A stretch of DNA of 63,737 bases, filler included, from Hyphochytrium catenoides (taxonomy: Eukaryota; Protista; Hyphochytriomycota): NCBI GenBank assembly GCA_900088475.1. It is 13 parts of 13 records of this genome, joined end to end, with 100 filler letters (N's around TTAATTAATTAA, not from the genome) between each part and the next. Parts side by side here need not be neighbours in the genome. Positions count along the whole stretch, not along the records: positions 1 to 21,967 come from FLMG01001732.1; 12 more parts are not named here. One strand, 5' to 3'. A program made the translations under genes and the position numbers. The notes beneath the pieces are model-generated. The model saw only the letters and a program-made list of their open reading frames with translations, was not told the origin of the DNA and ran no database searches. This document shows positions 1-21,967 of this stretch, one piece after another (position 1 is the first letter of the stretch; each line of letters begins with the position of its first letter).

Positions 1-41
1 TCTCTCTCTCTCTCTCTCTCCCACACACTCACTCACTCACA

Positions 42-81
<40 letters not shown>

Positions 82-358
82 CTCTCCTTTGCCTCTCTTC
101 CTGATGCCTCTCTCCCTGATCACTTTTACCCTGTCAAACACCTTAGAAGCGCCAAGCGACACAGCATGGACGCCGTTGGCGCACTCTTGCCTGCCCTTTA
201 ACTTTCAATCCCCGGCCAGTGACAGCGAGGAGGTAAACAGCCAAGCCGGGAGGCTCCACAACCAACAGCAGAGGATAGCTAAGGAGGGCAGCGGCCGTGG
301 TGGCAGAAGATAGGGACGAGGAATAGTGGGAGGAGACCGTCACTAGTGGTGGAGCACC

Positions 359-3300: not shown

Positions 3301-6300
3301 TTTTTCTTCTTCAGCTTCTTCCGTGCGTACTTCCTCTGTCTTACGCCTGATAAGAGAGAAGAGTTCTTGCAGCTATTGCCGCTTGCTCTCTGTCAGTCAC
3401 ACTATGGAAGTAATGGAGGAGGATGCCCAGAGGCTTTGGCTGCCCAGGTGGTTTCGTGTCATTGGACATTATTGCCAACTATCAGTCCTTCATGCTCTCT
3501 ATTCATTTTCTCTCTTATAACTGTTACTGTTGGTCACTTGTCAATCTGTCTGTCTGATGCCGCCGTCTCATCATGGGCGAGACTCTTAGGGGAGACTGCG
3601 TAGAAGTTCTAAAAATCTTGGCCACCTCTATGGAGCTTTTGCCTGAATGGAGGTGTTCGGTCTCATCTCATACCTTTTCCCCTCTAGCTAGAATTCCTTG
3701 CGGAATGCGAGCCCACTCCTGCCTTTAATGGCGAGACGGTGGAGGTCTTCCGATGGATGCTCGGCGCGCATGTGTTACCCAGCTATACCAAGAGATATAA
3801 GGTTATGCCCGCTTCATTCTCCGTAGTCGATCCTTCTTATAAGCTTTGGTTTCCTTTCTAAGAAAAGGCCGCCAGTAGGTTCTAATTCCTTTTTGCAATG
3901 CGCCTATCTCTAGTTACCATCGCGCTTCCCACCCGCTCTGTTTTATCGCGCTTGCTCTGACATATCTCTCTGTGATCGCTGTTGACTCGCGATTCATGAC
4001 AGGAAGCAATCATCAAGAATATTTTGGTTGCTTTGCAAAAGCATACCAATGCTATAGAATTAGTCGAGGTGAGAAGAAGCGCCTGCACGTGCTCACAGCA
4101 CTGCCTCGTTGGTCATTGCAACCTCTCCCTCTCAAGTCCCCGTGTGTACTTTTCTCTTCAGTAAAAGTTTTAAGAGAGTCTGCATAAGTGAAAAAAAAGT
4201 CAGCAGCCCCGAACTAATACTCTGCCCACCGCGTTCGCGGCACCCCTGCTCACGCTTTTGGTGGTATAGTTTGTGCGGCTTCTTGAAATCCTCCCAGTTT
4301 GGGCCCTGACATGGGGGACCCCGACCTACGAAGCCATCAACGCTTGGCTCATGCAGTACTTCCGTCAAGAAGAAGGTGGAAGAGCGAAGAAAAATCGCAA
4401 GGGAAAGAAGCCTGCTCTGTCTCTGGCGGATACCTTGAAGCGGGAAGTGCAACACATCTGCAAAGGGTGAGTAGCTTTTCGCGTCGCCAGTAGGAAGATT
4501 TTCTTGGTTGCTTCCCGTATTCTTTAGTAGCGCTAATATCGTCATCTATTGACTCTCTTTTGGCGCTCTCTGCCCTAGATCCTCTCTGCAGCTCTCAGTT
4601 TCTGCAATTGCTTTGCTCTTTCTATTCTTGGAGCCCGCAGAGCTATTTGAGGTGTTTGATCCTGCACTGACAGAGTTGGATAAGGTGAGACTTACAAAGA
4701 AGGACGTCGGCCCATTAAATAACGATAGAGTTGCCTTCAGCGGCATACTTGCTCCTAATGCTGTTGCTCTCCACTACACGGCTTCTGTTTCCAGGGCAAT
4801 TCTCACACCTATGTCAAAGAAAGCGTCTACAAGTCTCTTGCCTCGCTTTGCAACTCCGTCTTAGGGCTACTCGAGACATCAAGCGCTAAACCCGAGGTGA
4901 GCGAGAGAGAACATTCAACCCCGTTGGCGTCTCAGTCGGTGTTGAACTTTCACTGTTGGGCACGCCTCCTGACTTTTAGTCTGCCACCGGCTGCTAAAGC
5001 CGTTGNNNNNNNNNNNNNNNNNNNNNNNNNNNNNNNNNNNNNNNNNNNNNNNNNNNNNCTTCAACCACGGCTTTCCAGACTCAGGGTTCTGCAAAACATG
5101 GAGCAGCATGACTTGGAAGAAATCGATTTGTTAATGCAGGTACTTGCCTGCTTTGGTTACCAACAAAGTCTACCAACCAGTGCTAACCTTCTCGGCCCTG
5201 CGGTGCGTCACTGTTCCCACGCAGCTGACAGCTCGTTTCTTTTGGGCTTGCGCGGGCATGCAGCTTGTGGAGACATTCTTCCAGGCAATTATGATGGACT
5301 TGTCCATGACCTTCTCTGGGCCACAAGGTAAGCTGCCTCTTTGTAAAATATCTCTCTTTCTACCCATTGCGCTCTTTGTTCATACCAGGACTCCAAGTTC
5401 CACGGATGGGCTTTTCTCTGCCTTTCATCAAAATGCCACTTCTCTATTTGTTCCGCCGTCTCTGGGCAGTGCTCCTCCAGCCATTCCACTCTGCAAGCAT
5501 CGCATCTTTCCTTACGCCGCACGTTGACGCTTGCGGGCTATTAACTCTTCATTATAAGATTCTTCGCTAGAGGACCAGGTGCGCCGAGCTCTATGTTGTG
5601 AAGCTGTCGCAAAAATTGTCTCATCAAATAGCGCTCGGCTCGACATGTGGACCAGAAATGACTGGGTACCTGCTGCTTCCCTGCTTCTTCGTTCCATCTA
5701 CCTGATGGTCAATCGAGTGCCCTCTTAGGCGGACTCTCATTGACTCGCATGTATTGGTGAATCCTGTTCTCGGTCCAACAGCGCTAACACAATCTGAACC
5801 TCCGCCATATGACTTACAGTCTTTTTTTTCTTCTGAAGTACCTTATAGGGTCAATCTTGTGTCTTGTTAGCGCCATCTGTTGACGCTTCCTTTTTCCATT
5901 ATGCACCGTGAACCTTTCTGCATAGAATGTTACCTAAGCTCTCACACAGAATGCCTTGAGTAATAACCCTCCTTCACTTCATTCAGGTAAAGGTGCTAAC
6001 GAAGCCCCTCTTGCCTCGAAGTCGTGGAGGAGCTGGGAAGTGGTCAAAAGTCCTTAGCAGAATGGAGGAGAATCGTTGGAAGATTGTGGAGTTTCTTCTC
6101 GCTCCTAAGCCCCGAAAGAGAAAGAATAGGCCTGTGGAGCTCTGGATGGCGGCTGATCCTTCCCTAGTAGCCGAGATAAACAGACAGGCTCCCGAGCCTC
6201 CCGCGGCGGATCTCCCACAAAAGCAGTTTGACCTTGTCTACAGTGCTGTGTTAGAGGGATTAGAGGTAGCCACGTAAGTCCAGTGCCGTGAAAAATAAGA

Positions 6301-9300
6301 GTTGATGTCGCTACCTCCTCTTCCACCTGTCTCTGATGGATCTCTGTAGGGGATCTCCAGAGGCGATCGTTCCATTGTTTAACGTCTGTGGCACTTTGCT
6401 GCCCAAATTAATTGAACCGGCGGACCACATCGACGGCGATGAGGAAGCTGCGGGACCAACGGCGAAGGTCTTGGCTTGTTCTTGAGAGCTGCGTACCCAT
6501 GATTCCCTGACACCGGTTGTTATTATGCTGCTGCTTGGTGTGTAACGCAGGAGGAAGAAGAGCGCGAAAGGATAGAGGGCATTTTTCAGCGCTTGTGGAC
6601 GGCCTATCAGGACTCCGCGAAGAAGCCTCGAAAGGTATTCCTTTGTCTTCGGAGTTCTTGTGGGTGCGGGGTTCTTCTTATCCGCCTTCAATTCATCTCC
6701 TGCCTTCCTTAAGGCTAAGGCCCTTTATTGCTTTGCGTCTGACTTGCTTTCTTCTCCCCGCACCTTTTCTAATGGGCCGAGTAAATTGTATCTAAAAGCA
6801 TGCTGACCTTGTTCCTCTAACCTCGCGTGTTAGTTAACTGAGGCCTTGGTGCGCTGCGTGTTCCAACCGGCACTGATGAGGAAGAAGTCTCTTAATGAGG
6901 CTGAAGCTGCCCCAGTGAAGGTGGGAAAGAACATGACAGAAATTCCGAGGGAGCAAGCGGTGGATGGTTAGCTCGAGCTGATGTTTCTGGAGACAGTAGC
7001 CAAAGCATGGGAATGACGGTCGATTCGTTATCGAATCTAATTCGCTTGTGTCTCTAATCTATATGCAGGCCTTCTTCCTTCGACTGCTTGCTTGGGGCCG
7101 ACCACTTCATCCTTTGGTTATTAGAAGTTTGGCTCTAAGAGTTTGTGAGGTGTGGAGGGCGGAGCCACTGGCCGCCACCTACTACGTCAAGGAAATCTTA
7201 GAGCTTTGTACATACAGAGGTAGGACTGCAGTTGGACCGATATAGTCTTGACTCCTTCATGTCTTCCCTAAACCTTGATCCTCCGTCGAGTGTGCCACCA
7301 ACCTCACTGAGCGCTTCCTGTGTTCTTATCTCACAGAGGAGCCGCAGCGGGGCGATTTACTGTCAATTGACGAGGTGGACTTAGAGGAAAGTGCAGGAGT
7401 CGAACCGGTCTGTAACCTGCCGCTGACTCTCCTCCGGCACTTATTTCCTCTCTATCGGCCCCTATTAGACCTTCTGAGGCACTCATTGTCTCCGATGTCT
7501 GTTTCGTAGGCTCGCACATGGGTCCGCGTTATCGTGACTACCTTTTTGGACACACTTCCTCTCCGACACTCTGGTTATGATGGGAAGGTGCTTTATTATC
7601 AACCAAACTCTCCATCTGAGATGGCTCTTCAGGCCCGACTGCAGGACTTCATCGACACCTTGGTATGTTCGATCTTTTTTGAATGCTTCCGCTATACCTG
7701 AGGCCGTTTCTTAGCAGAAGCAGGATATCTCAGAGCGTCACGCTATCGCTTTCTTCCCGCTAGTGTCGAGCTTAACCGTTTTCCTGGGCAGGTTCTGTTG
7801 ATCCTGAAGCAAAACTCCTCTGCAGCGATGTCTAAGGTTCCCATGGTCAACTCAGCGCTCTTTGGGCTTAAACTTCGTTCTCTGCAAACCCTTTGCGTTA
7901 TATCCAAGTACATCAAAGAGGTAGGCTGCGGCTTTTCATAGCTTGCATCAGTCTGTCTCTTCCCTGGTTCTGCCACCCGATGATGGGGACGGTTAGCTGA
8001 TACATCCTGGCTCTTCATTTTGGCTACAGGCAACAGTAGACGAGGTGAACGCTACGCTTTGGGCACTTCTTGCGCAAACGCACCTCCCTGTAACGCGGTA
8101 CTACGTGGAGCTCGTCTGTATCCAGGTCTGACTTAGCGTATGGTGCTAGCCCCTTGCTCCTCCGTCGCTGGCACTCTCACATACTCGACTTCAAGGCTGT
8201 GTCCAAATGCATTTGAAGTGATAGGGCCCTAGGCAACGAACAAAAGCTCGTTTGTGGGGTCTATGGGATGAGCGCTGATCTACTTAGGAATAGTCATTGT
8301 GCTTTCCCATAGGTCATACTCGCTTACTCAGGCCGACGCGCGCTGATGTCGTTGCCCTGCGCTCTACCTGCTTGCAATGTGTTTCGTAGATGTGTCTCCG
8401 CTTTCCTGCCCGGACAATCCGTCCGCATTTGCTGCCTGTCATGCAGAACCTTCGGACGAGAGGCCAAGTAGCAGCCTCCGTTCTTATTGTTGGCGCTTAT
8501 GTTCTGAGAACAATGGACAAGGAGGAGAAGGACTACAAAGAATATAGGAATGAGGTACGGAGTACCAGATAACGTGCGCAGCGGTGACAAGCTCCTGTCT
8601 ATGAACTTCCTCTTGTTGAGCTTCTATTACCTTTTCTTCATCTTTGGCGCTTAAGCTTAAACAAGCCTCTATACTTTATGCTCTGCTGTATCTAATTCCT
8701 GGGGACACCCATATCAACTGGTGGTCTTCATCTCTTTCTCTCACCGCTACTTGTCCTTTTGCCTTCCTTCTTTGTATCTGGGGAATTTTGCAGCTTGTCA
8801 AGAGCGTCCTCCCCTGGTTGGGGTCATCGACAGGGGTTGCACGGGTTATTGCCCAGTTGGTACTGACTGAGAAACTTCCAGAATGTGTGGCAGAAGATGG
8901 TACCGATTCTCTTTTGTCACTTTCTCTGGCTCCACTTCTAAGTAGCCCTCTGGCTGCTGCCAAGCTTCGTCTTCTCTGGTCCTATTTCGGAACCTATATT
9001 ATTTACAATTCTTCCTTAATGCTTCAACCTGGTGGGTCGCGACCCCTCATCTGACGTCCATGGCTTCTATCCTAGTGGGGAAGGGCACTTTGGACGCTGA
9101 GTACTTGCGCAGTACCTGCGACTTTTTGCGCAACAACCGTGATATCTACAAGCTCATTGAGAAGCAAAGAAAGATGTTTGACGAATTGGAGCCAGCCAAA
9201 GGTTGCTCTCTTGAGGTGAGCTTCGCTTCAATCCCTCCACTATCGCGTGTGCAGAGTTCTCGAGAATGACCGAGCAGTAATGTCAACACTAAGTCCCATA

Positions 9301-10832
9301 CCTATCCTTGTCCTGCCTTGAACGTGCTATCCTTACTCACCCCTCATGACTTTCCTTTATCCTCTTTCTCGATGCCCGTCTTCTGGACAGGCCCTGTTAT
9401 CCTCGCCTGTAAATGGTGTCAATGAGTTCACTCCTCAACCGCTGGTGGAAATGATGAAGGAAGCCATGATCGATAGATTCAATGCAGCCAACGAAGTATG
9501 TGAGACCGAAAAATGATGCACGGCATTTGTGGTGTCTTATGTCTCCGGGATTAAAGACCAATTTTTAAGGCGAGGGCAGACAAAAACGAGGAGGGACCTT
9601 TCCAGAAAGGCTAGCTCACTGTCAAGCTAACGCATGATCTGCGTACATGTAGGCAGGAGAGATCGAGTGTGGGTTGGCAGAAGTCTACTTCAAGAAGTTG
9701 CGGCTAGGAGAGGAGGACGATCTTAAGAGAGCTGCGGAGGGCAGTAACGAGCGTCAAGACATTCAACGGAAAATCGATCCGACCGCTGTCTTGGACCGGC
9801 TCATGGACAGCTCCGTGGGCCTGTTGGAGAGAGAGCAGCTGGAGGCCAAACCGAAGCAGGACCTGATCGTCGTTGCCAGGTTGATCAAAACTCGTCGCCT
9901 TCTGGAATGTTTCCTAGTTGGTCATTGTATGCCTTCCCCTCCATGATGCGGCTCGGCTTCTTCTAATGGTCATCCTCTTGCACCGTGTCTGCATTGGATA
10001 GAAGCCGTATGCCTCTTGTCTCTTCCTATCCGCTTGAGGGGGTCAGAAGAGTCTCAGTCTATCCTCTGGGGTCACCTGGCATTCGAGATGGTGCATTGGT
10101 TAACCCTTAAGACTCTGATATCTCTATACTTAACATTCCCCCTGCCATGTCGTAGCCTCGTAGACAAGATCCCCAACCTTGCAGGTCTTGCCCGAACCTG
10201 TGAGATCTTTGGTGCACAGAAGCTGATTGTGGGAAACCTGAAACTAAGGGATGAGCCCCTATTCTCACAGATCTCCGTCACGGCAGAGAAATGGGTCCAG
10301 ATGGAAGAGGTAAACGGGTCTTTGCCGACCTTGCCCCTCGAGCTTCTGCAATTCACATTTCCTCTTCTCGTCTTCGGACCGTTAGGTGAAGGAGGATGAG
10401 CTTGCTCGATACTTGCGAAAGTGCCGAAGCGACGGCTACAAAGTGATCGGAGTAGAGCAGACGGCCAATAGTCAAAGTCTAGAGAACTTCAACTTCCCCT
10501 CGAAGGTAAGTGGGCTACTCGTCTTCATCTCGTTTTCTTCTCACCGTGAGCCCACGGACTGACCACGATAATGGTCCAGGCGGTCCTTGTGCTCGGGAAG
10601 GAGAAGGAGGGAATACCTGTCCACTTGCTAGGACTCTTGGATTGCTGTGTGGAGATCCCTCAGCTGGGCATCATCAGGTATAAAAAATGGGTAAATTCAT
10701 TACGCTGTTCCTTCCCTACTTAGTCATTGATGTCATTGACCAACTGGCAGGTCACTTAATGTCCATGTGAGCGGCGCCATACTCATCTGGGAGTATACGA
10801 GGCAGAGACTGAGGGCCGGTTCTTCGCGATGA
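359..10832 (+). CDS. TRM3: tRNA (guanosine-18-2'-O)-methyltransferase, Trm3/TARBP1 family; multi-exon, long helical N-terminus and C-terminal SpoU domain
   Basis: Spliced 3' exons read DLIVVA|[26 protein letters not shown]...ISVTAEKW...[10 protein letters not shown]...[31 protein letters not shown]|[27 protein letters not shown], with TGA ending at 10832. These are SPOUT motifs 1-3 as in Trm3/TARBP1; IQRKIDP at ~9760 precedes the domain. Upstream coding exons with GT-AG junctions run back to ATG 359. The start and some internal junctions are uncertain, and there is a gap at 5006-5058. Confidence 0.9.
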
Positions 10833-11053
10833 GGCTAGTTAGCTCTGGCTCAACTATTTATGACTTAGTAGTACAGGCTGTAATTATGGAGGATCAAACC
10901 CAGAGCAGGCTTGTGCTCTTTCTTACCGCTTTCCAAATACTGTCCAACAACCAGTGGTCCTACCCCTGGTCAATAGCTCCTACTCTATCCAACAAGCAAA
11001 AGTGCCACTTAGGATCGCATTCTTAGGATTGTGTCCCGGCTCAGGGAGATAGA

Positions 11054-14000
11054 CTAAGGAAGTAAGCGCTCATCATGAGACATTAGAGGGACAAGACGTA
11101 TTAATGGGCGACGTAAACTGATAGCGTCGCAGTATGCAAAGGAATTATACGTTTCCTGGACAGCAGACAGCTCAGAGTCAGAGAGAGAGAGAGATGTCCG
11201 TGGACTCTTTCCCGTTTGTCCATCTAGCAGCTCTCCTCCCACGATAAACTGTAGCTCCACTATCCCAGCTCTCCTCTTTGTAAAATATGCACTGTGACTC
11301 TCTGTCTGGCTTGCCCCACTCTTGTTACGGAAGGAAGTCGGCAGCATCCAGCTTTCTAAGGTAGGACGCACACTGCGCATTCTGCTGTTCGTCTCTGGGA
11401 TCCGCACCCTCTTGGTTCCAGGGTGCCTCATTCATGACCCGAACGGCATGCTTCCTGATTGCTTGCTCTACGATGTTTCTCACGGCTCTGCCGTTCCCGT
11501 CTCTGATGGCTGCAACGGAATCAAAAAGTGCCTGGGCAAGGGAGGGAAGGCCATTCTTACGTGAGTGAAGGATGTGCGGTAAGAGACCAAGGAGCAGAAA
11601 GTGTAACGAGGAGCAAGTTGGATGAATAAATGCAAGAGTCTATCAGGAGGCAGAAGGCAGGAGCTGCTCGGGCCCTACACCAGCAGAGTCAAAGGAGAAG
11701 AGAGGTCGAGCCCCAGGGAATCATGACGAGCCATAAGCCTGAGCCCAGCTCGAGAAAGTGCTGGCCTCAGAGGAAAGACGACCGCTCTACGTTCTCACTT
11801 TCTCTCCCCTCCTGGTGAGCTGGTAGCCCTTCTCTATGATCTGGTTCGCCGCCATATAGTAGAGCTGAGGGCTACTGAAGTCCGCAAAGTGGAAGACATG
11901 AGGGAATCGTGACCTACAGCGCAATGACCATCGATCAATAAGTCCTTGCAGAGGGAGAGAGAGAAAGCGGGGACGCAAAGAGAGAAACGAGAGACCGGGA
12001 AGAAAAGAGAGAGGAAGGAAAAAACGGAGAGAGAGATCATATTGAGAGAGAACATGACCAACCGAAGCCTGCCAATGAAAGAGACAACGAGGAGCCTTAA
12101 GCCCTTAGACGGCAGGAGGCTGACTACTATCAGGAGAGAGGAGGCACTCTACCTCAGCCCAGGGTTCCTGCTAAGAAGCTTCTGCATTTCCTCAGGGTAT
12201 CTGATCGTAAGAGATCGGCGTACGCAGAGAAGGAGAGAAGCCCGACCAGAATAAGGGACGTAGATAATAGCTGATCAGAGCTGCGCACGCATTACGCCGA
12301 AGAATGTATTTTCTAAGCCTTACCCAGCCAAGATGACTAGCAACCTCTCCCTGTGGTCCTCCATGAACTTAACCAACGTGTCCAGAGCTTCCCTGGTCGT
12401 TGGTGAGAGCGTTAGAGTCAAACAGTAGAGAGTGGAAACAGACAATATTAGCACAAAGAGAAAGAATCAAGTGAGTAGGAGATATTGAGCTTATAGCCTT
12501 TAAGAATAGAGAAGACAAATAGAGAGTATGTAAGAATAGCTAAACGTACAAGGATAGAGAGGCGAGTGAGCGAAAGGCGGGAGAGGAGAGAGAGCGGGAG
12601 AGCATAAGAGCGACGGAAAGAGAGAGAGACAAAGGAGGAAAGAGAAAGAGAGGAGGGAGAGAAGGCAGAGAGAGAGAGAAAACAATGCACTAAGGAGAGA
12701 GAAAGAAAGTACAAGAGAGAGGAAGATAACATAAGCGAGGGAGACTAGTTAACTACCGTCCATAGCAGTCCTTAGCATCCGAGGCAAGCGAATACGCCTC
12801 ATCGATGAAGAGAACGCCATCAAGTGCACGCAAAGCTACCTCATGAGTCTTGAGAGCCGTTTGTCCTGCAGTAAGACAAGTTAGTGACGGCATTAGTGTC
12901 TGGCCGCCTCGCTCTGTCCCCATTGTTTACCTCTCGACCGCTTTATCTTTCACGTCACAGCAAAGTGCCACTCATGTCTCGCTATCTCTTGATCGCCCAC
13001 ATTTAAAGAGGTCTTTCCTAAGATTTTGCCCTGAAAGCATCAGGCCCTCCACCTGTTCTTATACAAGCGCCCTCTCAACAGACCAGTCTCTCTCGCTTCT
13101 CTGTCTCTCTCCTTCTCCCTGTGTCATTTGAAGCTTCTATGTCCCTAAGATTACCTTGGTAGCCTGCCACCAAGTCATTTCTGGATGATACCAAGCCAGG
13201 AAATAAGTCAGAAGAGAGAGGCATCAGACAAGATAGAGCAAGGCTGGCGTAAGTAGCACTCGTCGTCAAGAAAGAGTCGCATGTTCTTAAGATTTGACTG
13301 CAGGCGAGAAAGAGAAGACAAACTTTCTTGCTCCCTTCTTCCTTCTGTCCACTACCTGGAGACCTCTACGAGGTGACCTTTCCTCAGCACTCCGAGGAGC
13401 ATCAGCAATCGGCCGAGGAGACGTGCAGCGGTGGTCTTGCCAGTGCCTGGACTCCCTGTGAAGACCATGTGGGAGGGATACACGCGCTCTTCGGGCCTGG
13501 CGTACTGGGTCAAACAGTTCAATCCAGAGTTAGCCGAATAGTGAGGAAGGGGCCCAGAGAGGCAGTGGAAGAGAAGTTATGATGGCAAAAGTCCACGGAA
13601 GAGAGGAAATCTGCAGGACGGGATGGAGGAGGCGCTTACCCCGTGTTCCTTTCGTAGGGAAGTCATTTTCTGGCAGGCCCTGAGTGCTTGGACGTGCTTC
13701 TTAAGGTCTTCCAGACCAACCATCGCCTCCAGGGCTGCGATTTGCTCGCTCAAGGACATACTGTCACCTCGTGCTGCGCCCTCGTCAAGCCAAGGCGTTG
13801 CAAAGTCCTCCTCTTGTGAGCACACAATGGTGTTCGAGGAACAATGAGGAGAGACCCGGAGAAGAGCGAGAAGGAGGAAGGCGGAAGAGTGAGAGAGAAG
13901 GGAGATAGAGTTAGAAGACGAAAGAAAGTCATACAGACAGAAGAGACGGAAAGGACACCAAAGGAATGGGTAGAACTAGCATGAGCACCTATGAAGATGA

Positions 14001-14253
14001 ACAGCCCAGACATCGTCGGATACTGATATTGCTCTCTCTCTACCTCCTTCTACCTGTTAAGGTGACCAGAGTCTTTCGTGAGATAGTTCCTAGCTTCGCA
14101 ATGCGGCTTGACTGGCTCTGTATTGCTCGCTCTACCATAGACGCTGCCAGGTCTCGATTCTTCCTAACAGAGGAGGAGCAACGAAGATATGGGAGAGAGA
14201 GAGGGACAGACAGAAGACGAGGACGAGAGTGAGAAACGGAGAGGGATTAAGCC

Positions 14254-14326
<73 letters not shown>

Positions 14327-16821
14327 AAGAGAGAGAAAAGGAGAAAAAGAGTGAGGTCGTCAAAACCTCAAAGGAAGGGATAAAACGGCGAAAGAGGAAC
14401 TTGCAAAAAGGAAACCAGGGGAAAGGTAGAGGTAAAGAGAAGGGTGCCAGTCTGAGCGACGGCACGGATTTGGGAGCCACACAAGGATGCTATTGTCTCG
14501 TGAATAAATGGAGAGAGGACCTACTCTGGGCTGTCTGGCTGCCTGAGCTTTGCCGCGCAGAGCTTCACAAGCTTCTCAGGTGGGGCACAAGCATTAGGTT
14601 CGGCGCCTTCTGGGCTCAATAGCGAGAGAGAAAGCTCCATTCTTCTGCTCTTCACCTCCTGATGCACAGCCCTCGCCAGCTCCTCAGCACTAAAGTCAGG
14701 GAACACAATCTCCGTAAACAGAGCACGGAAATCCTTGAACGAGGTTAGAAGCCTTCCCAGCCCTTCCTGCGGGCCAATGAGAACGAGCACGAGAGTTGTC
14801 TCCTCGCTTTGGGTGTCTAACAGGTGAGAATAGGCGGATCAAGCTCAGCACTTGGAGGCACCAGGACTCGGGAAAGGCACAAAGTGTGTGAGAAGACGCA
14901 AGACAGAGGTGAAGAGTAGTCCCAGAGAGCATCCCGGCTGGAGGAGCAGGTCATATGCTCTCTGCGTATGGGAGCAAACTAAGGAGCGATAGACGGCGAC
15001 CAGAATGGGAATAGATAGGAAGAAAGAGTTAGAGAAAGGAGGAAGACAGAGAGCGAGAGAGACAGAGAGCTAGTAGAAGCTAGAAGATGAGGGCTCTGCA
15101 AAGACTTACGCTCTCGTCTTTCTTCCCCCTTCTGCCTGCCAATGAGAGCCCTTGGGAGCCTATTGGCAGCCACCACATCGTCACGGGCCAGCGGCTCGCC
15201 TTCTGGCTCTCCTCCTTCCTCCTTGTTGCTCTTCTTTCTCTCTCTCTCTTCTCTTCGAGCACCCTCACTCTCAGCAGGCTGATCGAGTCGGAGAGTACGA
15301 ACATCGACCATCCTCATCTCTGGTGGTGCTCGGTCCGCACCGAGCCTCATCGCCGTCCTTCTCTGTCTCTTCTTGAAGCGTAGAATTGTCTCGACCATTG
15401 CAGCTACACATCGCAGGGAGAGAGGCGAAGAACTCTCTCCAGCTAGACCGCCGCCGCCGGAACTTGGCCATGTACAGTCAGTGATAACCAGCATTCCCCC
15501 TCTCGCTTTCTCCAGAGCCTTTTTGGTGGCGTCAACGACCTCCTCGGGGTATTGAGAGCCCGTTAGCTCTGCCTGTGAAGTCCTGAATATCTTTGTGGGG
15601 TCGATGAAGGATGAAGATGAGAGAAGCTTTCCAATCACCGTAGCTACGAACTCTGCAGCAGTCCCTGGACAAAAGGAACCATTAGTCAGNNNNNNNNNNN
15701 NNNNNNNNNNNNNNNNNNNGAGAGAGAGGGAGAGAGAGAGAGAGCAGGGAGAAAGAGAGAGAGAGAGAGAAAGATAGAGGGCAGATTGCATCCTCCTGGA
15801 GGAAGCACATAGGTGGATGACCGATCCTTGCAGCAGAATGGGAAAGAATAGCGTGTAGGTTCAACCAGGGGTAAAGACATTTAGAGGAAGCAGTAATTGA
15901 GAGCTATGGCCTGTTCTTCTTCTGACTCCTAGCTAGGAGAGGGAAGGAAGAAATCTCTAAGTGTCCGGACTCTCACCAGGATTGGTATGCATCGCATAGT
16001 TTGGCAAGGTGCAGGGCCCCGTGAAGACCTCACGCTTGGCCTGAGTGACAAGGTAATCCTGCAGAGCGTGCATTTGGGAAAGGACAGACGGAGGAACGAT
16101 GCAGTCCTCAAAGAGTTGCTCCAATGAGGCGTCCCTGCCCTTCTCTCCCTGCGCTGCCACTTCCTTCTCTTCGCTCCTTTCTCGGTTCTGAGGGTATTGG
16201 TTTCCTTTCTTCGTCTTCTTTGAGTCCAGGTCAGGACAGCCTGCAGAAGGCACATCATGTTAAGCAAAAGCTTTGTCAGAGGACTAAGGCTGATGGTCAG
16301 CTGGAGAGCAAAGAGTGAACTCTACTGATGGGGAAGCAATGAAGGCTTGAACCCTGCTGCTTACCATGCTGATCAAGCTCATCAACGACGTCNNNNNNNN
16401 NNNNNNNNNNNNNNNNNNNNNNNNNNNNNNNNNNNGGGAGAGAGAGAAAGAAAGAGAGAGAGAAAGACGAAACAATAGCAAAAGAGTTGACCAGGACACA
16501 GGCGCAAAGAAGCATAATGCCACTACTTAATGCTTCTCACATCTTCCAGGTAAACAAAGAGCCCATGGCCCTCCGGACAATGAAAGTATCGCTGACCATC
16601 CATGTCCCCATCGCAGTCCGAATGCTGCCTCCGCTCCTCCAGCTCCAAACCCAGAAGTGGCCTTGTCGACCCTCTAGTACGGGACTGGATGTAGCCCACA
16701 AAGCGGATACGGGCTGTAGCCTTAGTACCCTTCAGACGGATCCGGCGATCCATTAGGTGACTTCGCAGCTTGTGGAGGTCAAGAGCAGGCCCCCGGCCAG
16801 AACCTGAAGAAGACCAACACG

Positions 16822-16862
<41 letters not shown>

Positions 16863-16935
16863 AATTTGAACCGACAGACCGACAGACCGAGAGACACAGA
16901 CAGACAAAGAAGCAGTAAAGGATCGCAAGACATAC

Positions 16936-16988
<53 letters not shown>

Positions 16989-17655
16989 TGGGAAGTACAC
17001 ATAGTATTGTGCAGGGAGGTAGTAGCAACAGAGAAGGCAAAAGAAGCAATGGTCGACCTCGGATATCCCCTAACAAAGGACTGAAGTACAAGGGCAGGAC
17101 ACTGACAACACTTATGCTGAGACGTGACGCCGCGGCATTCCTGTCTCACTGACCTGCTGGCTTTGTTGGGTCTTTATCAGCTTCACGTGGTGAGACAGGG
17201 TTCTCCTGGGGCCAAGAAGGTTGTGATCGGCCTCTAGGAGCTGCTTTCGGAGCTGAGAGACGGTCATCTGGGCCTGAGGCCTGTCGATTAGGGATGTTTC
17301 TAGCACTTGGAGGTAGAGGGTCATCCGAGGCTGAAGGCACCGCTTTCCTTTGAGCCTCAGCGCCTCCTTCTTCCCTGGCAGCATTGCTACGTGGGCATAC
17401 CTTCGCCCAGTGTTCAGCCTTTTGGGCCTTGAAGATCACTTCGCGGCAGTGTCCGCACTTCGTGAGGACGCATCTGGAGGCGCGATCACTGAAGTGTGAT
17501 TCCTTCAGCTCTACCGAGACTCTCTTCTGGCAGTTCAGGCACTCGAACTGCCTCGGGCTCCCATATTTCTCCAGAAGAAGGAAGCCCACTGCCAGCTTCC
17601 CCGCCTTGATCAGCTTCTTTCCTGGCTCTGACCTGCGACCTTTCTGCTCCGCCAT
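11054..17655 (-). CDS. Multi-exon protein: TRAF-type Zn fingers + CAP-Gly + degenerate CbbX/SpoVK-like AAA+ + intact CbbX/SpoVK-like AAA+
   Basis: ATG 17655 MAEQK...; CLNC...H...[28 protein letters not shown] (TRAF-like Zn fingers). ARIRFVG...LLGLELEE...[23 protein letters not shown] (CAP-Gly, ~16530-16750). AAA-2: MVGLEDLK...[20 protein letters not shown]...GHLVEVSR|NDLVAGYQ|GQTALKT...[14 protein letters not shown]...|[23 protein letters not shown]|[16 protein letters not shown]|[13 protein letters not shown]...[14 protein letters not shown]. The 3' end (below ~11370) is approximate. Confidence 0.85.
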
Positions 17656-17959
17656 TTCTATTGGATTGGGATTCAAGACGCCTTTCTACTTGGCGCGCTA
17701 TCCGGTGCTAATGTCAGCCAACGGAAGATGTGTGTCTGGCGCTGGCGCTGGCGCTGGCGCGATGAGAGAGTTGAACACTGAAGAGTAGGAGAGGATGGAA
17801 AATGAAGAGAGAGAATGAGGGGCGAGCCTTCAAAAGGCTCACACGTAAATGTGACAGTCAATGGCATGACAACTAGGGAACCGACTAGAGAGAGAGAACT
17901 AAGGATGAAGGAATGGCAACTTAGTAAGAGAGAGAGAGNNNNNNNNNNNNNNNNNNNNN

Positions 17960-18001
<42 letters not shown>

Positions 18002-18207
18002 AGAGAGAGACAGAGAGGGCGAAAGCAGAATACTGGTCAACCGCGCAGCCACCGACGGGTAAGCATGTATCGCCTGGTTCCTGATGTTCCCCTTTGCCCT
18101 CTTGCTTTGTTCTCTCTCTCTCTTTCTCTCTCTTTGTCTTCTCTCTCTCTCTCTCTCTCATCTCTCTCCTTCCTCTCGTGATCATCGCTCTTTCTTCGCG
18201 GTTCTAC

Positions 18208-18511
18208 CTGCGCCATAACCTCGTCCTCGTGCATCTTCCAAACCTCCAGGAATCTGCGGCTGTCCAAGAGCTCAAAGTGATGAAACTTCTCTTGCATATC
18301 CTTATACCTAAGGAAGAAGTGAGGAAGAGGAAGAAGTGAGGAAGAGAGAGAGAGCGTGACATATAGAAATGAACGACGGGGCGAGAAAGAGAGAAACGGA
18401 GAGAGAGAGAGACGGAGAAAGTGGGAGAGAGACAGGGCGACACGGCACTGATACACGGTGATCAGCCAGTACAGCTGCCAGAATAACCTAACTAACAAGC
18501 AAGGCGAGTCA

Positions 18512-18550
<39 letters not shown>

Positions 18551-19522
18551 GANNNNNNNNNNNNNNNNNNNNNNNNNNNNNNNNNNNNNNNNNNNNAGAG
18601 AGAGAGAGGGAGAGAGGGAGAGAGAGAGAAGGAGAGAAAGAAAAAGAAAGAGAGATATAAAAGGAGAAATTAGAGAAATGGCCAGACAAACAGGCGGAGA
18701 GAGAGAGAATAGGGAGAAAGGAGGGAAGAAGACAAAGAGAGAGAGAGAGAGAGAGAAAGAGAGAGCCTGTCGTTAAGAGTGAGGTTACGGTTCGTACTGC
18801 TTAGTAATCTTTCTATATTCTTCCGTCAATTCCTGATTTCTCTGCTTCTCACTGCTGTCAGTCGCCGCGTACTTGGCCTTCAGTTGAGAGAGTGTGTCCT
18901 TGAGTCTGTGGACCAAAAGGAATGAGTAATCAGAGAGGACGAGGGAGAGGAAGAGAGAGGGAGAGAGGGAGAGAGAGAGAGAGACAGAGAGAAAAGAGAG
19001 AGAGAGCGAGAGGGAGCCAGCGAGAACAGAAAGAGGGAAGAGAGAGAAAGCGAGAGAGAGAGTGAGAGCGAGAGAGGGCAACTGCGAGTGCGAGAGAAAG
19101 AGAGAGAGAACAAGCGAGAGGACAAAGAGAGAGANNNNNNNNNNNNNNNNNNNNNNNNNNNNNNNNNNNNNNNNNNNNNNNNNNNNNNNNNNNNNNNNNN
19201 NNNNNNNNNNNNNNNNNNNNNNNNNNNNNNNNNNNNNNNNNNNNNNNCTGGTACGTCACGCGCATCTGAAACAAGCAGAGCGGAGAGAGAGAAAGAGGGA
19301 ATTAATCAATATCAGAAAGCAAGAGAGAGAGAGAGACGCGCATACAACGAGAAAGAGGAAGACGGAGAGACAGAGAGAGAGAGAGAGAGAAAAAAAAGGG
19401 AGAGACGAGAACGGAGCAATGACAAAGGTAAAAGTGCTCACAAGCAGAAACTGCGAGGGAAAACCAGGAAATTAAAAAAAAGAAAGAAAGAAGCGAGAAG
19501 AACGTGCGCGAGAGAGAGAGAG

Positions 19523-19575
<53 letters not shown>

Positions 19576-20412
19576 AAAAGAGAGAGAGAGAATGAAAAAG
19601 AGAGAGAAACTGAGCGCGCGCGCGAGAGAGAGAGAGGAAGAAGAGAAGAAAAACCAAGGTACCTCTTCAAGCTGTTGCTCCAATAACTGAATGTCGTTCT
19701 CCAGCTTCGTCTTCAGTTGAGAGTATTCCTCCTCATCCCGCGTCTGCAGCTCCTTTATCTCCTTGTGGAACCTTGGACGAAGAGGAAGAGGGGAGAGAGA
19801 GAGATAACACAAGGGAGAGACACAGAGAGAGACAAAGAGAGAGAGAGAGACACCAGGTGAGATCCATCGCTTTCCGGTAGTGTACAACAAGTAAAGAGGG
19901 AGAGAAAGGGATTGAAGAGAGAGAAAGAGAGAAAAGAGGGAGAAAGAAAGCAAAAAGAGAGAGAGAGAGACACAGAGAGAGAGAGAGAGAAGCAGGTAAA
20001 CAGAGGGAGAGAGGGAGAGAGAGACGCTAGGAGTTGAGTGGTCTCCGCTGGAGGATGGAGGATATAAGAAAGAGAGAGAAACAGGGTTTGCGATGAACGG
20101 ATGAAGAGAGAGAGAGAAACAGCTTTAGTCTCCGACGTACCTCTCTTCCTGCTGCAGCTTTCTCTCCACGTAAGAGACTTCCAGTTGTCTTCTCTTCTCT
20201 ATCAACGACTCAAATTCCTCTCTGTGTCCCTTGAGAAGCGCCTCTCTCTCTTTCAGAAAGGCCTCTTCGATTCTCTCCAGCTCTCTCTCCATCTCTTCCC
20301 TCATGGCCGTGACCTGCTCCGTCATTCTTGCTATCACATCTTCCACATCCGTTGATTGCCGCTTCAGGGCCCGGACATATTCTTCATCCTTTAGCTTCAG
20401 CTGCACGGCAGC

Positions 20413-20451
<39 letters not shown>

Positions 20452-20690
20452 GAGAGAAAGAGAAAGAGGCAGCCGAGAGAGAGAGAGAAAGAAAGCAGGA
20501 GGGAGCCCCGAGAGAGAGCAAAAGAAACGAACAGAAAGAAGGGAGAGAAAGGCGAAAGGAGAGGGAAAGAGACCGGAGAGAATGAGCGACAAAGAGAGAG
20601 GAGGAAAGAAAAGAGAATGAAGAGAGACAGAAGAGGAAGAGAGAGAGTGCAAGAAGGTGAGAACGCGGAAGAAGGTGAGAGCGCGTCTGT

Positions 20691-20722
<32 letters not shown>

Positions 20723-20883
20723 AAAAGAGAAAAAGAGAGAGAGAACGAGAGAGAAAGAGAGAGGGAGCGAGAAAGAGAGAGGGAATAGCTTGCCTGTTCG
20801 GTGAAGGTTGATATAAGCTTGTCTTTGGAGGCGAGAATCAGCGCGCAGGCTGCCTTCTGAGTCATCATGTCCTGAGCCACATG

Positions 20884-20914
<31 letters not shown>

Positions 20915-21965
20915 TGCAAGAGAGTGAGGGAAAGCATGAACGCAGAGAGAATGCGGCGAAACAAAAGCGTAAAAAGAGAGAGAGAAAGACAGGAATAAGA
21001 GATAGAGGGAGGAGCGAGGAAGAAAGGAAAGAGAGCAACAACGACGTAAGAAGAGAGAGAGAGAGAGAGAAACAAAGAGAAAGGAATAATCTAAGAGAGC
21101 AAACATAGGAAAGAGACGGCCCGACAATGGAAAGACAGGGAATGGATAATCTATGGCAGTGAGAGCGACGTAGAATGGTACTTGTGCGGGGGTAGAGAGA
21201 GGAAAGAGAGAAAGAAAGGAGATTGGAGAGAAAGACAGAGAGAAAGAGAGAGAGAAAGACAGCGAGAAAGAGAGAGAGAACAAGCGCGACGTGAGAAGGC
21301 TTCCTTACGTCGTAGAGCTCCTTTGGCATCGTCTGGTGAGACAACTCGGCCCATCGCAGCTCGACAGCTGCGTTTCTCTTGGCAGAGAGCGCCTGTTCCT
21401 CCTCCAGTCTCTTCCGCCTCGCCTCTTTCTTTCTCTCTTCTCCTTCACGGCGCTTGCTCTCTTCCGCATCAGAGACCACGCGCACAGAAGTGACAGCAGC
21501 AGTGGTAGAAGCCTACCCAGACAGTGAGAGAGCCAAAGAGAAGAGAGAGAAAGAGAGAGTGAGAAAGAGAGAGATAGGAAGAGAGCAGGGAAAGAGGGAA
21601 AGAGAGTGTGAGAGAACAGAGTGAAAGAGAGAGAGAAAAAGTCAGAGAGAGGGGAAGAGAGACAGAGAAAGACAGAGAAAGAAGATAGAGAGAGGAAAAG
21701 AGAGAAAGAGCGAGTGAGTGCACGTGAGAGAAAGAGTGAAAGAGGGAGAGAGGGGAAAGGGGAGACAGGGAGCGACATGAGGGGGACGGAGAGAGAGAGA
21801 GAGACAGAGAAAGAGAGAGACATAATGAGAGAGACAAAGAGAGAGACGGAGAAGTAAGGTTGTCACTACACTGGAGCCGGAAGAGAGAGGAAGAGAGAGG
21901 AAGAGAGATACCTTCAATCTCTCGACGAGCCCCAAAGACTCTTGCTTCTGTTTGGCTCCTAACAC
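18208..21965 (-). CDS. DRC1: Dynein regulatory complex subunit 1 (DRC1/CCDC164, NYD-SP28 domain), partial
   Basis: Exons read RRKRLEEEQALSAKRNAAVELRWAEL...PKELYD | QKAACALILASKDKLISTFTEQ | LKLKDEEYVRALKRQSTDVEDVIARM...ELERIEEAFLKERE | DEEEYSQLKTKLENDIQLLEQQLEE | MRVTYQ | ...NQELTEEYRKITKQ | YKDMQEKFHHFELLD...VWKMHEDEV. The 5' end is lost at the spacer (21968) and the C-terminal half is not found. Confidence 0.88.
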
Positions 21966-21967
21966 TT

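What the first reader, a model, noticed from the sequence alone, without database searches (positions are those of the whole stretch)
11054..17655. TRAF-Zn-finger / CAP-Gly / tandem CbbX-type AAA+ fusion: candidate cytoskeleton-targeted remodelling ATPase
Seen: one phase-consistent spliced frame links TRAF-like Zn fingers (17400-17550), a CAP-Gly domain (16530-16750) and two CbbX/SpoVK-family AAA+ modules. Known: this AAA clade includes the red-type Rubisco activase CbbX (which pulls on a substrate C-terminal tail), SpoVK and ESX EccA, while CAP-Gly domains bind tubulin/EB C-terminal tails. I do not know a characterised protein with this combination. Inference: a tail-recognising adaptor fused to a tail-threading motor could remodel tubulin or +TIP/axonemal complexes, independently of the katanin/spastin clade, with the TRAF fingers linking to ubiquitin signalling.
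Basis: partly seen in the sequence, partly recalled or inferred. Interest (0 to 1): 0.8.

Follow-up and report, generated by a model that had tools for sequence, protein, structure and literature searches.

The report
Zinc-finger/CAP-Gly protein fused to SpoVK-type AAA+ pair
A real intron-rich eukaryotic gene most likely joins two small zinc fingers and an atypical CAP-Gly domain to one dead and one intact SpoVK/CbbX-type AAA+ ATPase module, an unreported domain combination whose proposed link to microtubules is not supported by the sequence.

Summary
The observation largely holds. On the minus strand I built a 15-exon GT..AG model (17655 to 11325, at least 969 aa).

- **Domains.** It encodes two C2HC zinc fingers, a CAP-Gly domain (Pfam E 4.8e-12) and two SpoVK/CbbX/EccA-type AAA+ modules.
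- **Gap 15690-15719.** It is intronic. Homologues align without a gap across the exon 4/5 junction.
- **Gap 16393-16435.** It removes the acceptor of a mini-exon between the CAP-Gly and AAA parts. That link is therefore inferred, at about 85%, and not shown. No RNA run was listed.
- **First AAA module.** It is a pseudo-ATPase. The Walker A Lys-Thr is Ala-Glu, Walker B is Asp-Cys, and the GY and Asn signatures are lost.
- **Second AAA module.** It is intact and carries all three signatures of the clade. It is 39-47% identical to bacterial multi-AAA SpoVK-like proteins.
- **CAP-Gly domain.** The GKNDG tail-binding motif is replaced by QHS(DC)DG. This undercuts the tubulin/EB-tail idea.
- **Zinc fingers.** They resemble TRAF/XAF1/CEP104 fingers only below threshold.
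- **Relatives.** No orthologue, paper or fused relative was found, but the searches could not take the spliced protein.

My reading is a specialised AAA+ chaperone whose N-terminal domains recruit an unknown client. I class it as a new variant of a known kind, of moderate interest.

The parts
17154..17655 (-). Exon 1: ATG at 17655-17653, two C2HC zinc fingers, then an ~80-aa disordered linker
   Evidence: There is an in-frame TAG at 17688-17686 upstream of the ATG. The donor is GTCAGT at 17153.
17395..17541 (-). Zinc-finger pair: C39-x2-C42-x11-H54-x7-C62 and C67-x2-C70-x11-H82-x4-C87
   Evidence: Read from the sequence. Pfam gives only sub-threshold hits: CEP104_ZnF E 0.028 and zf_UBZ E 0.11. 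The Atlas neighbours are XAF1, TRAFD1, CEP104, UBZ and zf-TRAF clusters at 0.85-0.88, which are leads only.
16541..16803 (-). Exon 2: CAP-Gly domain (16744-16541) with QHS(DC)DG in place of GKNDG
   Evidence: PF01302 E 4.8e-12, 46.1 bits. The best solved matches are the p150Glued and CLIPR-59 CAP-Gly domains, and that alignment shows the motif loss. Atlas CAP-Gly clusters score 0.91. The acceptor is TTCAG and the donor is GTGAGA.
16393..16435 (.). Assembly gap at the boundary of intron 2 and exon 3
   Evidence: The 5' flank is a CT repeat like the other introns. The 3' flank is coding-like.
16365..16392 (-). Readable part of mini-exon 3 (acceptor lost in the gap)
   Evidence: The frame is open up to the gap. 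The donor is G|GTAAGC, and phase 1 matches exon 4.
15977..16240 (-). Exon 4: linker and the N-terminal helices of AAA module 1
   Evidence: Aligns with the region upstream of Walker A in the homologues.
15690..15719 (.). Assembly gap inside intron 4
   Evidence: It is flanked by a CT repeat and by the acceptor TTTTGTCCAG of exon 5. The homology alignment runs ungapped over the exon 4/5 junction.
15110..15664 (-). Exon 5: core of AAA module 1, followed by a purine-rich, charged low-complexity insert. Degenerate Walker A (N-P-G-T-A-A-E) spans 15983-15651 across the junction. Degenerate Walker B (V-I-T-D-C) is at 15494-15474.
   Evidence: Other in-phase donors exist at 15341 and 15269.
14525..14816 (-). 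Exon 6: sensor-1 and arginine-finger region of module 1 (GP instead of GY; the Asn is lost) and the start of the lid
   Evidence: Weak colinear match to TIGR02881 positions 140-199. Alignments.
14054..14163 (-). Exon 7: end of the module 1 lid
   Evidence: A BLAST segment runs from exon 6 through module 2 against P0002 (33% over 403 aa).
11325..13812 (-). Exons 8-15: intact AAA module 2 and its AAA_lid_6 lid, with the TAA at 11327-11325. Exon coordinates: 13812-13640, 13504-13356, 13180-13155, 12865-12757, 12392-12324, 12200-12153, 11913-11799, 11531-11325.
   Evidence: The spliced module aligns over 245-290 aa with bacterial SpoVK-like modules (iE 1e-43 to 1e-62, 35-47% identity). The exons map colinearly on TIGR02881. 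AAA_lid_6 scores E 1.7e-5. CbbX and EccA1 are the best solved matches.
13430..13456 (-). Walker A of module 2 (G-S-P-G-T-G-K-T-T)
12798..12815 (-). Walker B of module 2 (V-L-F-I-D-E)

Best explanation
One protein-coding gene of an intron-rich, flagellated eukaryote encodes a protein of about 970 aa or more.

Domain order. [quoted passage not shown]

Shown.
- The domains and their order.
- The continuity of the AAA part.
- The loss of the catalytic motifs in module 1.
- Their full retention in module 2: Walker A and B, the pore-loop Tyr in GYQG, LAGY, NPGLR and GNGRAVRN.

Inferred.
- The protein forms a two-tier ring, as related AAA+ proteins do. The dead first tier serves as scaffold or substrate platform, and the second tier hydrolyses ATP and pulls on a client.
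- The zinc fingers and the CAP-Gly domain act as the client- or adaptor-recruiting region. This matches the clade's habit of pairing a conserved motor with a variable N-terminal domain for one dedicated client.
- The client is unknown. Because the CAP-Gly domain has lost GKNDG, it probably does not read EEY/F tails in the canonical way.
For: - Exon model with consistent phases and GT..AG sites.
- CAP-Gly above the Pfam cut-off.
- The spliced module 2 aligns end to end with SpoVK-like modules.
- The exons map in order on TIGR02881.
- CbbX and EccA1 are the best solved relatives.
- Module 1 is homologous but degenerate.
- The clade signatures and the rule of a variable N-terminus come from PMC11513918.
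- The interval between the CAP-Gly exon and exon 3 is 71% C+T on the sense strand. The introns are 57-80% (one exception) and the flanking intergenic DNA is 49-55%.
- Exons 3 and 4 have no usable start codon, and only about 150 bases separate them from the CAP-Gly exon.
Against: - No transcript evidence: no RNA run was listed.
- The acceptor of exon 3 is in a gap, so the frame across the CAP-Gly/AAA join is unknown.
- An unspliced read-through of exon 2 would stop five codons later (TAG 16525-16523) and give a 260-aa protein.
- No orthologue with the same architecture was found.
- The two-tier ring and the client-recruitment role are inferred from relatives and were not tested.
Confidence: 0.6

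Rival explanations
1. The CAP-Gly domain recognises the acidic-aromatic C-terminal tails of tubulin, EB or CLIP proteins and hands them to the AAA+ pore. The protein would then be a microtubule, +TIP or axoneme remodeller that arose independently of katanin and spastin.
For: CAP-Gly domains usually bind such tails (PMC3806363). The best solved matches are the dynactin p150Glued and CLIP-family CAP-Gly domains. Module 2 keeps a pore-loop Tyr, and CbbX is a tail-pulling relative. The organism has cilia, because the neighbour is an NYD-SP28 gene.
Against: GKNDG is replaced by QHS(DC)DG and the groove Trp by Leu. The Lys and Asn that contact the tail are therefore gone. Gene adjacency is no evidence in a eukaryote. 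No orthologues were available for a phyletic test.
Confidence: 0.12
2. Two genes: a small zinc-finger/CAP-Gly protein of about 260 aa that ends at the TAG at 16525-16523, and a separate tandem-AAA gene whose first exon starts inside the gap.
For: An in-frame stop lies five codons after the exon 2 donor. The join cannot be read because of the gap. Bacterial relatives of the AAA pair have no CAP-Gly domain.
Against: A 3' UTR, a promoter and a 5' UTR would have to fit into about 105 bases of CT-rich, intron-like sequence plus the gap. Exons 3 and 4 have no start codon upstream of the AAA fold. The exon 2 donor GTGAGA is identical to two other donors of the gene. No small homologue of 87-276 aa was found.
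Confidence: 0.12
3. A ubiquitin- or adaptor-directed unfoldase. The UBZ/TRAF/XAF1-like fingers bind ubiquitin or a signalling partner. The atypical CAP-Gly domain binds a proline-rich or other peptide, as some non-canonical CAP-Gly domains do (from my own knowledge of CYLD; not checked here).
For: Sub-threshold zf_UBZ and CEP104_ZnF hits. The Atlas neighbours are XAF1, TRAFD1, UBZ and zf-TRAF clusters. The canonical tail-binding motif of the CAP-Gly domain is lost.
Against: All the finger assignments are below threshold. Structure prediction failed. There is no direct evidence of ubiquitin binding.
Confidence: 0.15
4. Scaffolding artefact: the pieces on either side of gap 16393-16435 come from different loci.
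For: The gap exists and its length is only estimated. The upstream NYD-SP28 gene also seems to lack its 3' half near another gap.
Against: Four of the six gaps in the piece, including the other one inside this gene, are flanked by a CT microsatellite on at least one side, as expected from local sequencing drop-outs. Strand, intron style and composition are the same on both sides of the gap.
Confidence: 0.05

Closest known systems
Bacterial multi-AAA SpoVK-like ATPases (for example WP_058297324.1 of [Bacillus] enclensis, P0003; P0002, P0004, P0005)
   Same: Tandem AAA plus AAA_lid_6 modules with the same inter-module junction. Module 2 is 35-47% identical over 245-290 aa. The C-terminus ends at the same ...DF motif.
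   Different: The bacterial proteins have active P-loops in all their modules (alignment A2). Their N-termini differ (beta-helix, TPR or unknown), and none has a CAP-Gly domain or zinc fingers. They have no introns.
CbbX, the red-type Rubisco activase (PDB 3syk, 3syl, 3zuh)
   Same: Best solved match to the Walker A exon (E 8e-9). Same clade signatures. A pore-loop Tyr is present.
   Different: CbbX is a single module of about 300 aa. Here every exon scores lower on the CbbX model than on the SpoVK model. The architecture is different and there is no Rubisco context.
EccA1 (type VII secretion) and SpoVK (MurG chaperone)
   Same: Same clade. A variable N-terminal domain recruits a dedicated client (PMC11513918).
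   Different: The summed exon scores (about 162 bits) are far below the equivalog cut-offs of 423 and 467 bits. The N-terminal domains here are eukaryotic ones.
CAP-Gly proteins (p150Glued, CLIP-170/115, CLIPR-59, TBCB)
   Same: The CAP-Gly fold signature is above the Pfam cut-off. The ...G-x-R-Y-F-x-C-x-x-G-H-G-h-F-V end of the domain is conserved.
   Different: GKNDG is not conserved and the groove Trp is Leu. None of the CAP-Gly proteins I know carries a SpoVK-type AAA+ module (from memory; not tested by an architecture search).
Katanin, spastin and fidgetin (microtubule-severing AAA+ proteins)
   Same: The general idea of an N-terminal targeting domain followed by a ring ATPase.
   Different: They belong to a different AAA+ clade. 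Here the lid is AAA_lid_6 and the best matches are CbbX, SpoVK and EccA. No MIT domain was found.

Membership tests
SpoVK-EccA-like clade of classical AAA+ (CbbX, SpoVK, EccA; PMC11513918) | Intact Walker A and Walker B (module 2) | tested here: met
   G-S-P-G-T-G-K-T-T at 13456-13430 and V-L-F-I-D-E at 12815-12798.
SpoVK-EccA-like clade of classical AAA+ (CbbX, SpoVK, EccA; PMC11513918) | Tyr in a GY signature at sensor 1 (module 2) | tested here: met
   ...V-I-L-A-G-Y across the exon 12/13 junction. The feature is defined.
SpoVK-EccA-like clade of classical AAA+ (CbbX, SpoVK, EccA; PMC11513918) | Asn four residues before the first arginine finger (module 2) | tested here: met
   N-P-G-L-R-S-R-F across the exon 13/14 junction. 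The feature is defined.
SpoVK-EccA-like clade of classical AAA+ (CbbX, SpoVK, EccA; PMC11513918) | Sensor-2 arginine and an AAA_lid_6 lid (module 2) | tested here: met
   G-N-G-R-A-V-R-N in exon 15. PF17866 scores 25.2 bits against a cut-off of 24.3.
SpoVK-EccA-like clade of classical AAA+ (CbbX, SpoVK, EccA; PMC11513918) | The same signatures in module 1 | tested here: not met
   Walker A is N-P-G-T-A-A-E, Walker B is I-T-D-C, GY is G-P, and the Asn is Phe. Module 1 is homologous but is a pseudo-ATPase.
CbbX proper (TIGR02880 equivalog, red-type Rubisco activase) | Score above the equivalog cut-off, and best among the sister models | tested here: not met
   Exon scores are 41.8 and 24.7 bits, lower than on the SpoVK model, against a cut-off of 459 bits. 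Only single exons could be scored.
SpoVK proper (TIGR02881 equivalog) | Score above the equivalog cut-off | tested here: not met
   Six exons sum to about 162 bits against a cut-off of 423 bits. It is the best of the three models but does not make the protein an equivalog.
CAP-Gly domain (PF01302) | Pfam gathering score | tested here: met
   46.1 bits against 26.5, over profile positions 4-64 of 65.
CAP-Gly domain (PF01302) | GKNDG tail-binding motif | tested here: not met
   QHS(DC)DG aligns with GKN--DG of p150Glued. The role of the motif is described in PMC3806363.
CAP-Gly domain (PF01302) | Binding of EEY/F tails or microtubules | not testable with these tools
   This needs binding assays.
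TRAF/XAF1/TRAFD1/CEP104-type C2HC zinc fingers | C-x2-C-x11-12-H-x3-7-C spacing | tested here: met
   Two fingers at 17541-17395. The expected spacing is from my own knowledge.
TRAF/XAF1/TRAFD1/CEP104-type C2HC zinc fingers | A profile match above threshold | tested here: not met
   CEP104_ZnF scores 15 bits against 27.4, zf_UBZ scores 12.6 against 25.6, and zf-TRAF is not listed. Atlas scores are 0.85-0.88, all below 0.9. The fold model has pLDDT 55.8.
Katanin/spastin (meiotic-clade microtubule-severing AAA+) | AAA domain of that clade together with an MIT-type N-terminus | tested here: not met
   The best family, structure and lid matches are SpoVK, CbbX, EccA and AAA_lid_6, and no MIT hit was found.

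The most novel reading that the evidence does not exclude
A cilium- or microtubule-directed remodelling ATPase built on the SpoVK/CbbX/EccA clade. In this reading a eukaryote fused eukaryotic targeting domains (C2HC fingers and CAP-Gly) to a bacterial-type tandem AAA+ pair. That would be an invention of a cytoskeletal AAA+ remodeller independent of katanin and spastin.
Probability: 0.1. Interest if true: 0.75.

Novelty: new variant of a known kind. Interest (0 to 1): 0.4.

Why it matters
The SpoVK/CbbX/EccA clade is thought to consist of narrow, single-client chaperones whose variable N-terminus picks the client. The eukaryotic members are barely studied. A version with zinc fingers, a CAP-Gly domain and a dead first ring would add a new recruitment module to the clade. 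It would also offer a tractable case for two questions: what a pseudo-ATPase tier does, and what a CAP-Gly domain without GKNDG binds. If the client proved to be cytoskeletal, this would be a second, independent origin of a microtubule-directed AAA+ machine. As it stands it is a single unverified gene model in an unsampled lineage. Its value is as a lead, not as a result.

Tried and rejected
**RNA evidence**
- No RNA run was listed for the locus, so read laying could not be used.

**Spliced protein**
- It has no reference, so I did not send it to any database tool. Only single exons went out by reference. The spliced parts were compared locally with proteins that had already been fetched.

**Protein and DNA searches**
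- The big search with the module 1 exon gave five weak hits. Four of them are multi-AAA proteins carrying AAA_lid_6, of which the one with a name is bacterial. There was no self hit and no orthologue.
- The word search with the CAP-Gly exon found none.
- The metagenome loci search with the CAP-Gly exon found none.
- The word search with an exon of the neighbouring NYD-SP28 gene, meant to place the organism, found none.
- The profile search with bacterial scaffolds plus module 2 exons scored 8000 of 8000 candidates. The best 120 show no CAP-Gly entry in their (cut-off) Pfam lists, and every organism name given among them is bacterial, so it says nothing about the architecture.
- A first scaffold alignment (A1) was too poor to use.

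**Atlas feature search**
- It confirmed the CAP-Gly domain.
- It gave only leads for the fingers.
- It gave nothing for module 1.

**Structure prediction**
- Single-sequence AlphaFold models of the finger region (pLDDT 55.8) and of the CAP-Gly domain (pLDDT 44.3) were too poor for fold searches. None was run.

**Other**
- Rfam found nothing in 10700-18300.
- Four literature searches for the domain combination found nothing.

**Readings considered and rejected**
- A fusion with the upstream NYD-SP28 gene. There is an in-frame TAG at 17688-17686, no good acceptor, and the phases do not match.
- A donor at 17400 inside finger 2. It would destroy the finger.
- Coding sequence down to 11054. The homologues end at the TAA at 11325.
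Full report
**What is there**

The window is eukaryotic and rich in introns. On the minus strand, stop-free stretches with recognisable protein motifs alternate with CT-rich low-complexity stretches. From the sequence I built a 15-exon model and checked it by script.

| Exon | Coordinates | Note |
|---|---|---|
| E1 | 17655-17154 | |
| E2 | 16803-16541 | |
| E3 | ?-16392 to 16365 | 5' end lost in a gap |
| E4 | 16240-15977 | |
| E5 | 15664-15110 | |
| E6 | 14816-14525 | |
| E7 | 14163-14054 | |
| E8 | 13812-13640 | |
| E9 | 13504-13356 | |
| E10 | 13180-13155 | |
| E11 | 12865-12757 | |
| E12 | 12392-12324 | |
| E13 | 12200-12153 | |
| E14 | 11913-11799 | |
| E15 | 11531-11325 | ends in TAA |

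Every readable junction is GT..AG and all phases agree. The model gives 255 aa (E1-E2) plus 714 aa (E3-E15). The phases were used to pick the sites, so they are not independent evidence. The homology below is independent.

**Domains**

- **Zinc fingers.** E1 carries two C-x2-C-x11-H-x(4-7)-C fingers at 17541-17395. Pfam gives only sub-threshold hits (CEP104_ZnF E 0.028, zf_UBZ E 0.11). The Atlas feature search returns XAF1, TRAFD1, CEP104, UBZ and zf-TRAF clusters, all at 0.85-0.88, which the tool rates as leads only.
- **CAP-Gly.** E2 is a CAP-Gly domain: PF01302, 46.1 bits against a cut-off of 26.5. Atlas CAP-Gly clusters score 0.91. The best solved matches are p150Glued, CLIPR-59 and CLIP-115.
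- **AAA module 2 (E8-E15).**
  - After splicing it aligns over 245-290 residues with modules of bacterial multi-AAA SpoVK-like proteins (iE 1e-43 to 1e-62, 35-47% identity).
  - Its exons map in order on TIGR02881 positions 4-35, 43-80, 92-122, 128-149, 167-203 and 217-248.
  - The last exon hits AAA_lid_6.
  - CbbX and EccA1 are the best solved matches to the Walker A exon.
- **AAA module 1 (E4-E7).** It is homologous to the same modules, but weakly.

**The two gaps**

Gap 15690-15719 lies between the E4 donor (15976) and the E5 acceptor (15665). Its flanks are a CT repeat and a normal acceptor. The E4/E5 junction produces ...[19 protein letters not shown]. This aligns without a gap to ...F-S-G-N-P-G-T-G-K-T-T-V-A-R-I-V-G-K-L-L of a homologue. 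The two sides are therefore continuous and in frame in the mature message.

Gap 16393-16435 is different. Its 5' flank is intron-like CT repeat, and its 3' flank is already coding-like sequence (D-V-V-D-E-L-D-Q-H) followed by a good donor. The acceptor of E3 is therefore lost. E2 ends in phase 0. The E3 frame that fits E4 begins at the first base after the gap, so the join is in frame only if the missing exon bases are a multiple of three. I could not test this.

Indirect evidence favours one gene:
- The interval is 71% C+T on the sense strand. The other introns are 57-80%, with one exception at 36%, and the flanking intergenic DNA is 49-55%.
- The E2 donor GTGAGA is identical to two other donors of the gene.
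- E3 and E4 contain no start codon upstream of the AAA fold.
- Only about 105 readable bases plus the gap separate the two parts.

I put one gene at about 85%. No RNA run was listed, so there is no transcript evidence.

**Details that change the interpretation**

1. **Module 1 is a pseudo-ATPase.**
   - Walker A is N-P-G-T-A-A-E, so the Lys-Thr is lost.
   - Walker B is V-I-T-D-C, so the catalytic Glu is lost.
   - The GY signature is G-P, and the Asn before the arginine finger is Phe.
   - A purine-rich, charged insert of up to about 100 residues sits between the Walker B region and the sensor-1 strand.
   - Two alternative in-phase donors (15341, 15269) could shorten that insert.
2. **Module 2 is complete.** It has Walker A and B and a pore-loop Tyr (G-Y-Q-G). 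It also has the three signatures that define the SpoVK-EccA-like clade in PMC11513918: L-A-G-Y, N-P-G-L-R and G-N-G-R-A-V-R-N.
3. **'CbbX-type' is too narrow.** Every exon scores higher on the SpoVK model than on the CbbX or EccA models. The summed score of about 162 bits is far below any equivalog cut-off. The protein is a member of the clade, not of any of the three named families.
4. **The CAP-Gly domain lacks GKNDG.** In the alignment to p150Glued, G-K-N--D-G faces Q-H-S-D-C-D-G, and the Trp of G-K-W-V-G is Leu. PMC3806363 describes GKNDG as the tubulin-binding motif whose Asn bonds the EE[Y/F] tail. Canonical tail reading is therefore unlikely.
5. **The coding sequence ends at 11325.** The protein ends ...L-D-A-A-D-F-L-P, which aligns with the ...E-A-E-D-F-E end of the bacterial homologues. 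It does not reach 11054.

**Most likely mechanism**

PMC11513918 describes the clade as specialised chaperones with narrow clients, in which variable N-terminal domains recruit the substrate to a conserved motor. The present protein fits that pattern with eukaryotic recruiting domains.

I infer, but have not shown, a ring with two tiers. The dead first tier would act as scaffold or platform, and the second tier would act as the ATP-driven puller. The fingers and the CAP-Gly domain would select a client or an adaptor.

The client is unknown. A cytoskeletal client remains possible at about 10-12%. A ubiquitin- or adaptor-directed role suggested by the UBZ/XAF1-like fingers is about as likely, at about 15%.

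**Relatives and novelty**

No orthologue was found.
- The exhaustive search with the module 1 exon gave only five weak hits and no self hit. This genome and its close relatives therefore appear to be absent from the library.
- Word searches and a metagenome scan with the CAP-Gly exon found nothing.
- A profile search returned 8000 multi-AAA proteins. The 120 listed show no CAP-Gly entry in their cut-off Pfam lists, and every organism name given is bacterial.
- Four literature searches for the domain combination found no paper.

These searches are limited. The spliced protein has no reference and could not be sent to any database tool, and no tool offers a query by domain architecture. I therefore call it a new variant of a known kind, with the reservation that an InterPro architecture query could still show the combination elsewhere.

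The 39-47% identity of module 2 to bacterial multi-AAA proteins, together with the shared inter-module junction, suggests a bacterial origin of the AAA pair. I had no eukaryotic clade members to test this by a tree.

**Verdict**

The gene and its domains are real. The single-gene link is probable but unproven. The functional story is only partly supported, and its microtubule part is weakened by the sequence itself.

- Interest: 0.4.

Noticed in passing
window 18210-21500, minus strand: The upstream neighbour is a coiled-coil gene with an NYD-SP28 domain (Pfam E 7.5e-9), the type found in nexin-dynein regulatory complex subunits DRC1 and DRC2. Its exons are near 21450, 20400-20130, 19790-19690, 18900-18790 and 18330-18225. 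Its expected C-terminal half was not found before the next gene. Three assembly gaps (19135-19247, 18553-18596, 17939-17959) lie in this stretch, so exons may be missing or the scaffold may be incomplete.
   Followed up: partly
window 1-10720, plus strand: The downstream neighbour is a long multi-exon gene that ends in a SpoU-type RNA methyltransferase domain (PF00588, sub-threshold hits at E 1e-4 and 1e-3 on two exons). It resembles TARBP1-type tRNA methyltransferases. It converges on the AAA gene with about 600 bases between the two stops.
   Followed up: partly
window 11000-21967 compared with 1-10000: CT microsatellites and CT-rich sequence follow the transcribed strand. Introns are 57-80% C+T on the sense strand, and the GC and AT skews flip sign where the gene orientation flips near 10.7-11 kb. 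Four of the six assembly gaps are flanked by a CT repeat on at least one side.
   Followed up: partly
window 12866-13154 (intron 10): This is the only purine-rich intron of the gene: 36% C+T on the sense strand against 57-80% in the others. No Rfam family matches it, and the cause is unknown.
   Followed up: partly
window 15110-15340 (3' part of exon 5): A purine-rich, Glu/Arg/Lys-rich low-complexity insert lies inside AAA module 1, between the helix after Walker B and the sensor-1 strand. Three possible donors (15341, 15269, 15110) are all in phase 1, so alternative splicing could vary the insert length without breaking the frame.
   Followed up: no
proteins P0002-P0125: Proteins with two to four SpoVK-type AAA modules in tandem are very numerous (8000 of 8000 scored candidates at E <= 1e-10). 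Those that carry an organism name are bacterial. Their N-termini vary (beta-helix, TPR). Module 2 of the window protein is 35-47% identical to their modules, which hints at a bacterial origin of the AAA pair.
   Followed up: no
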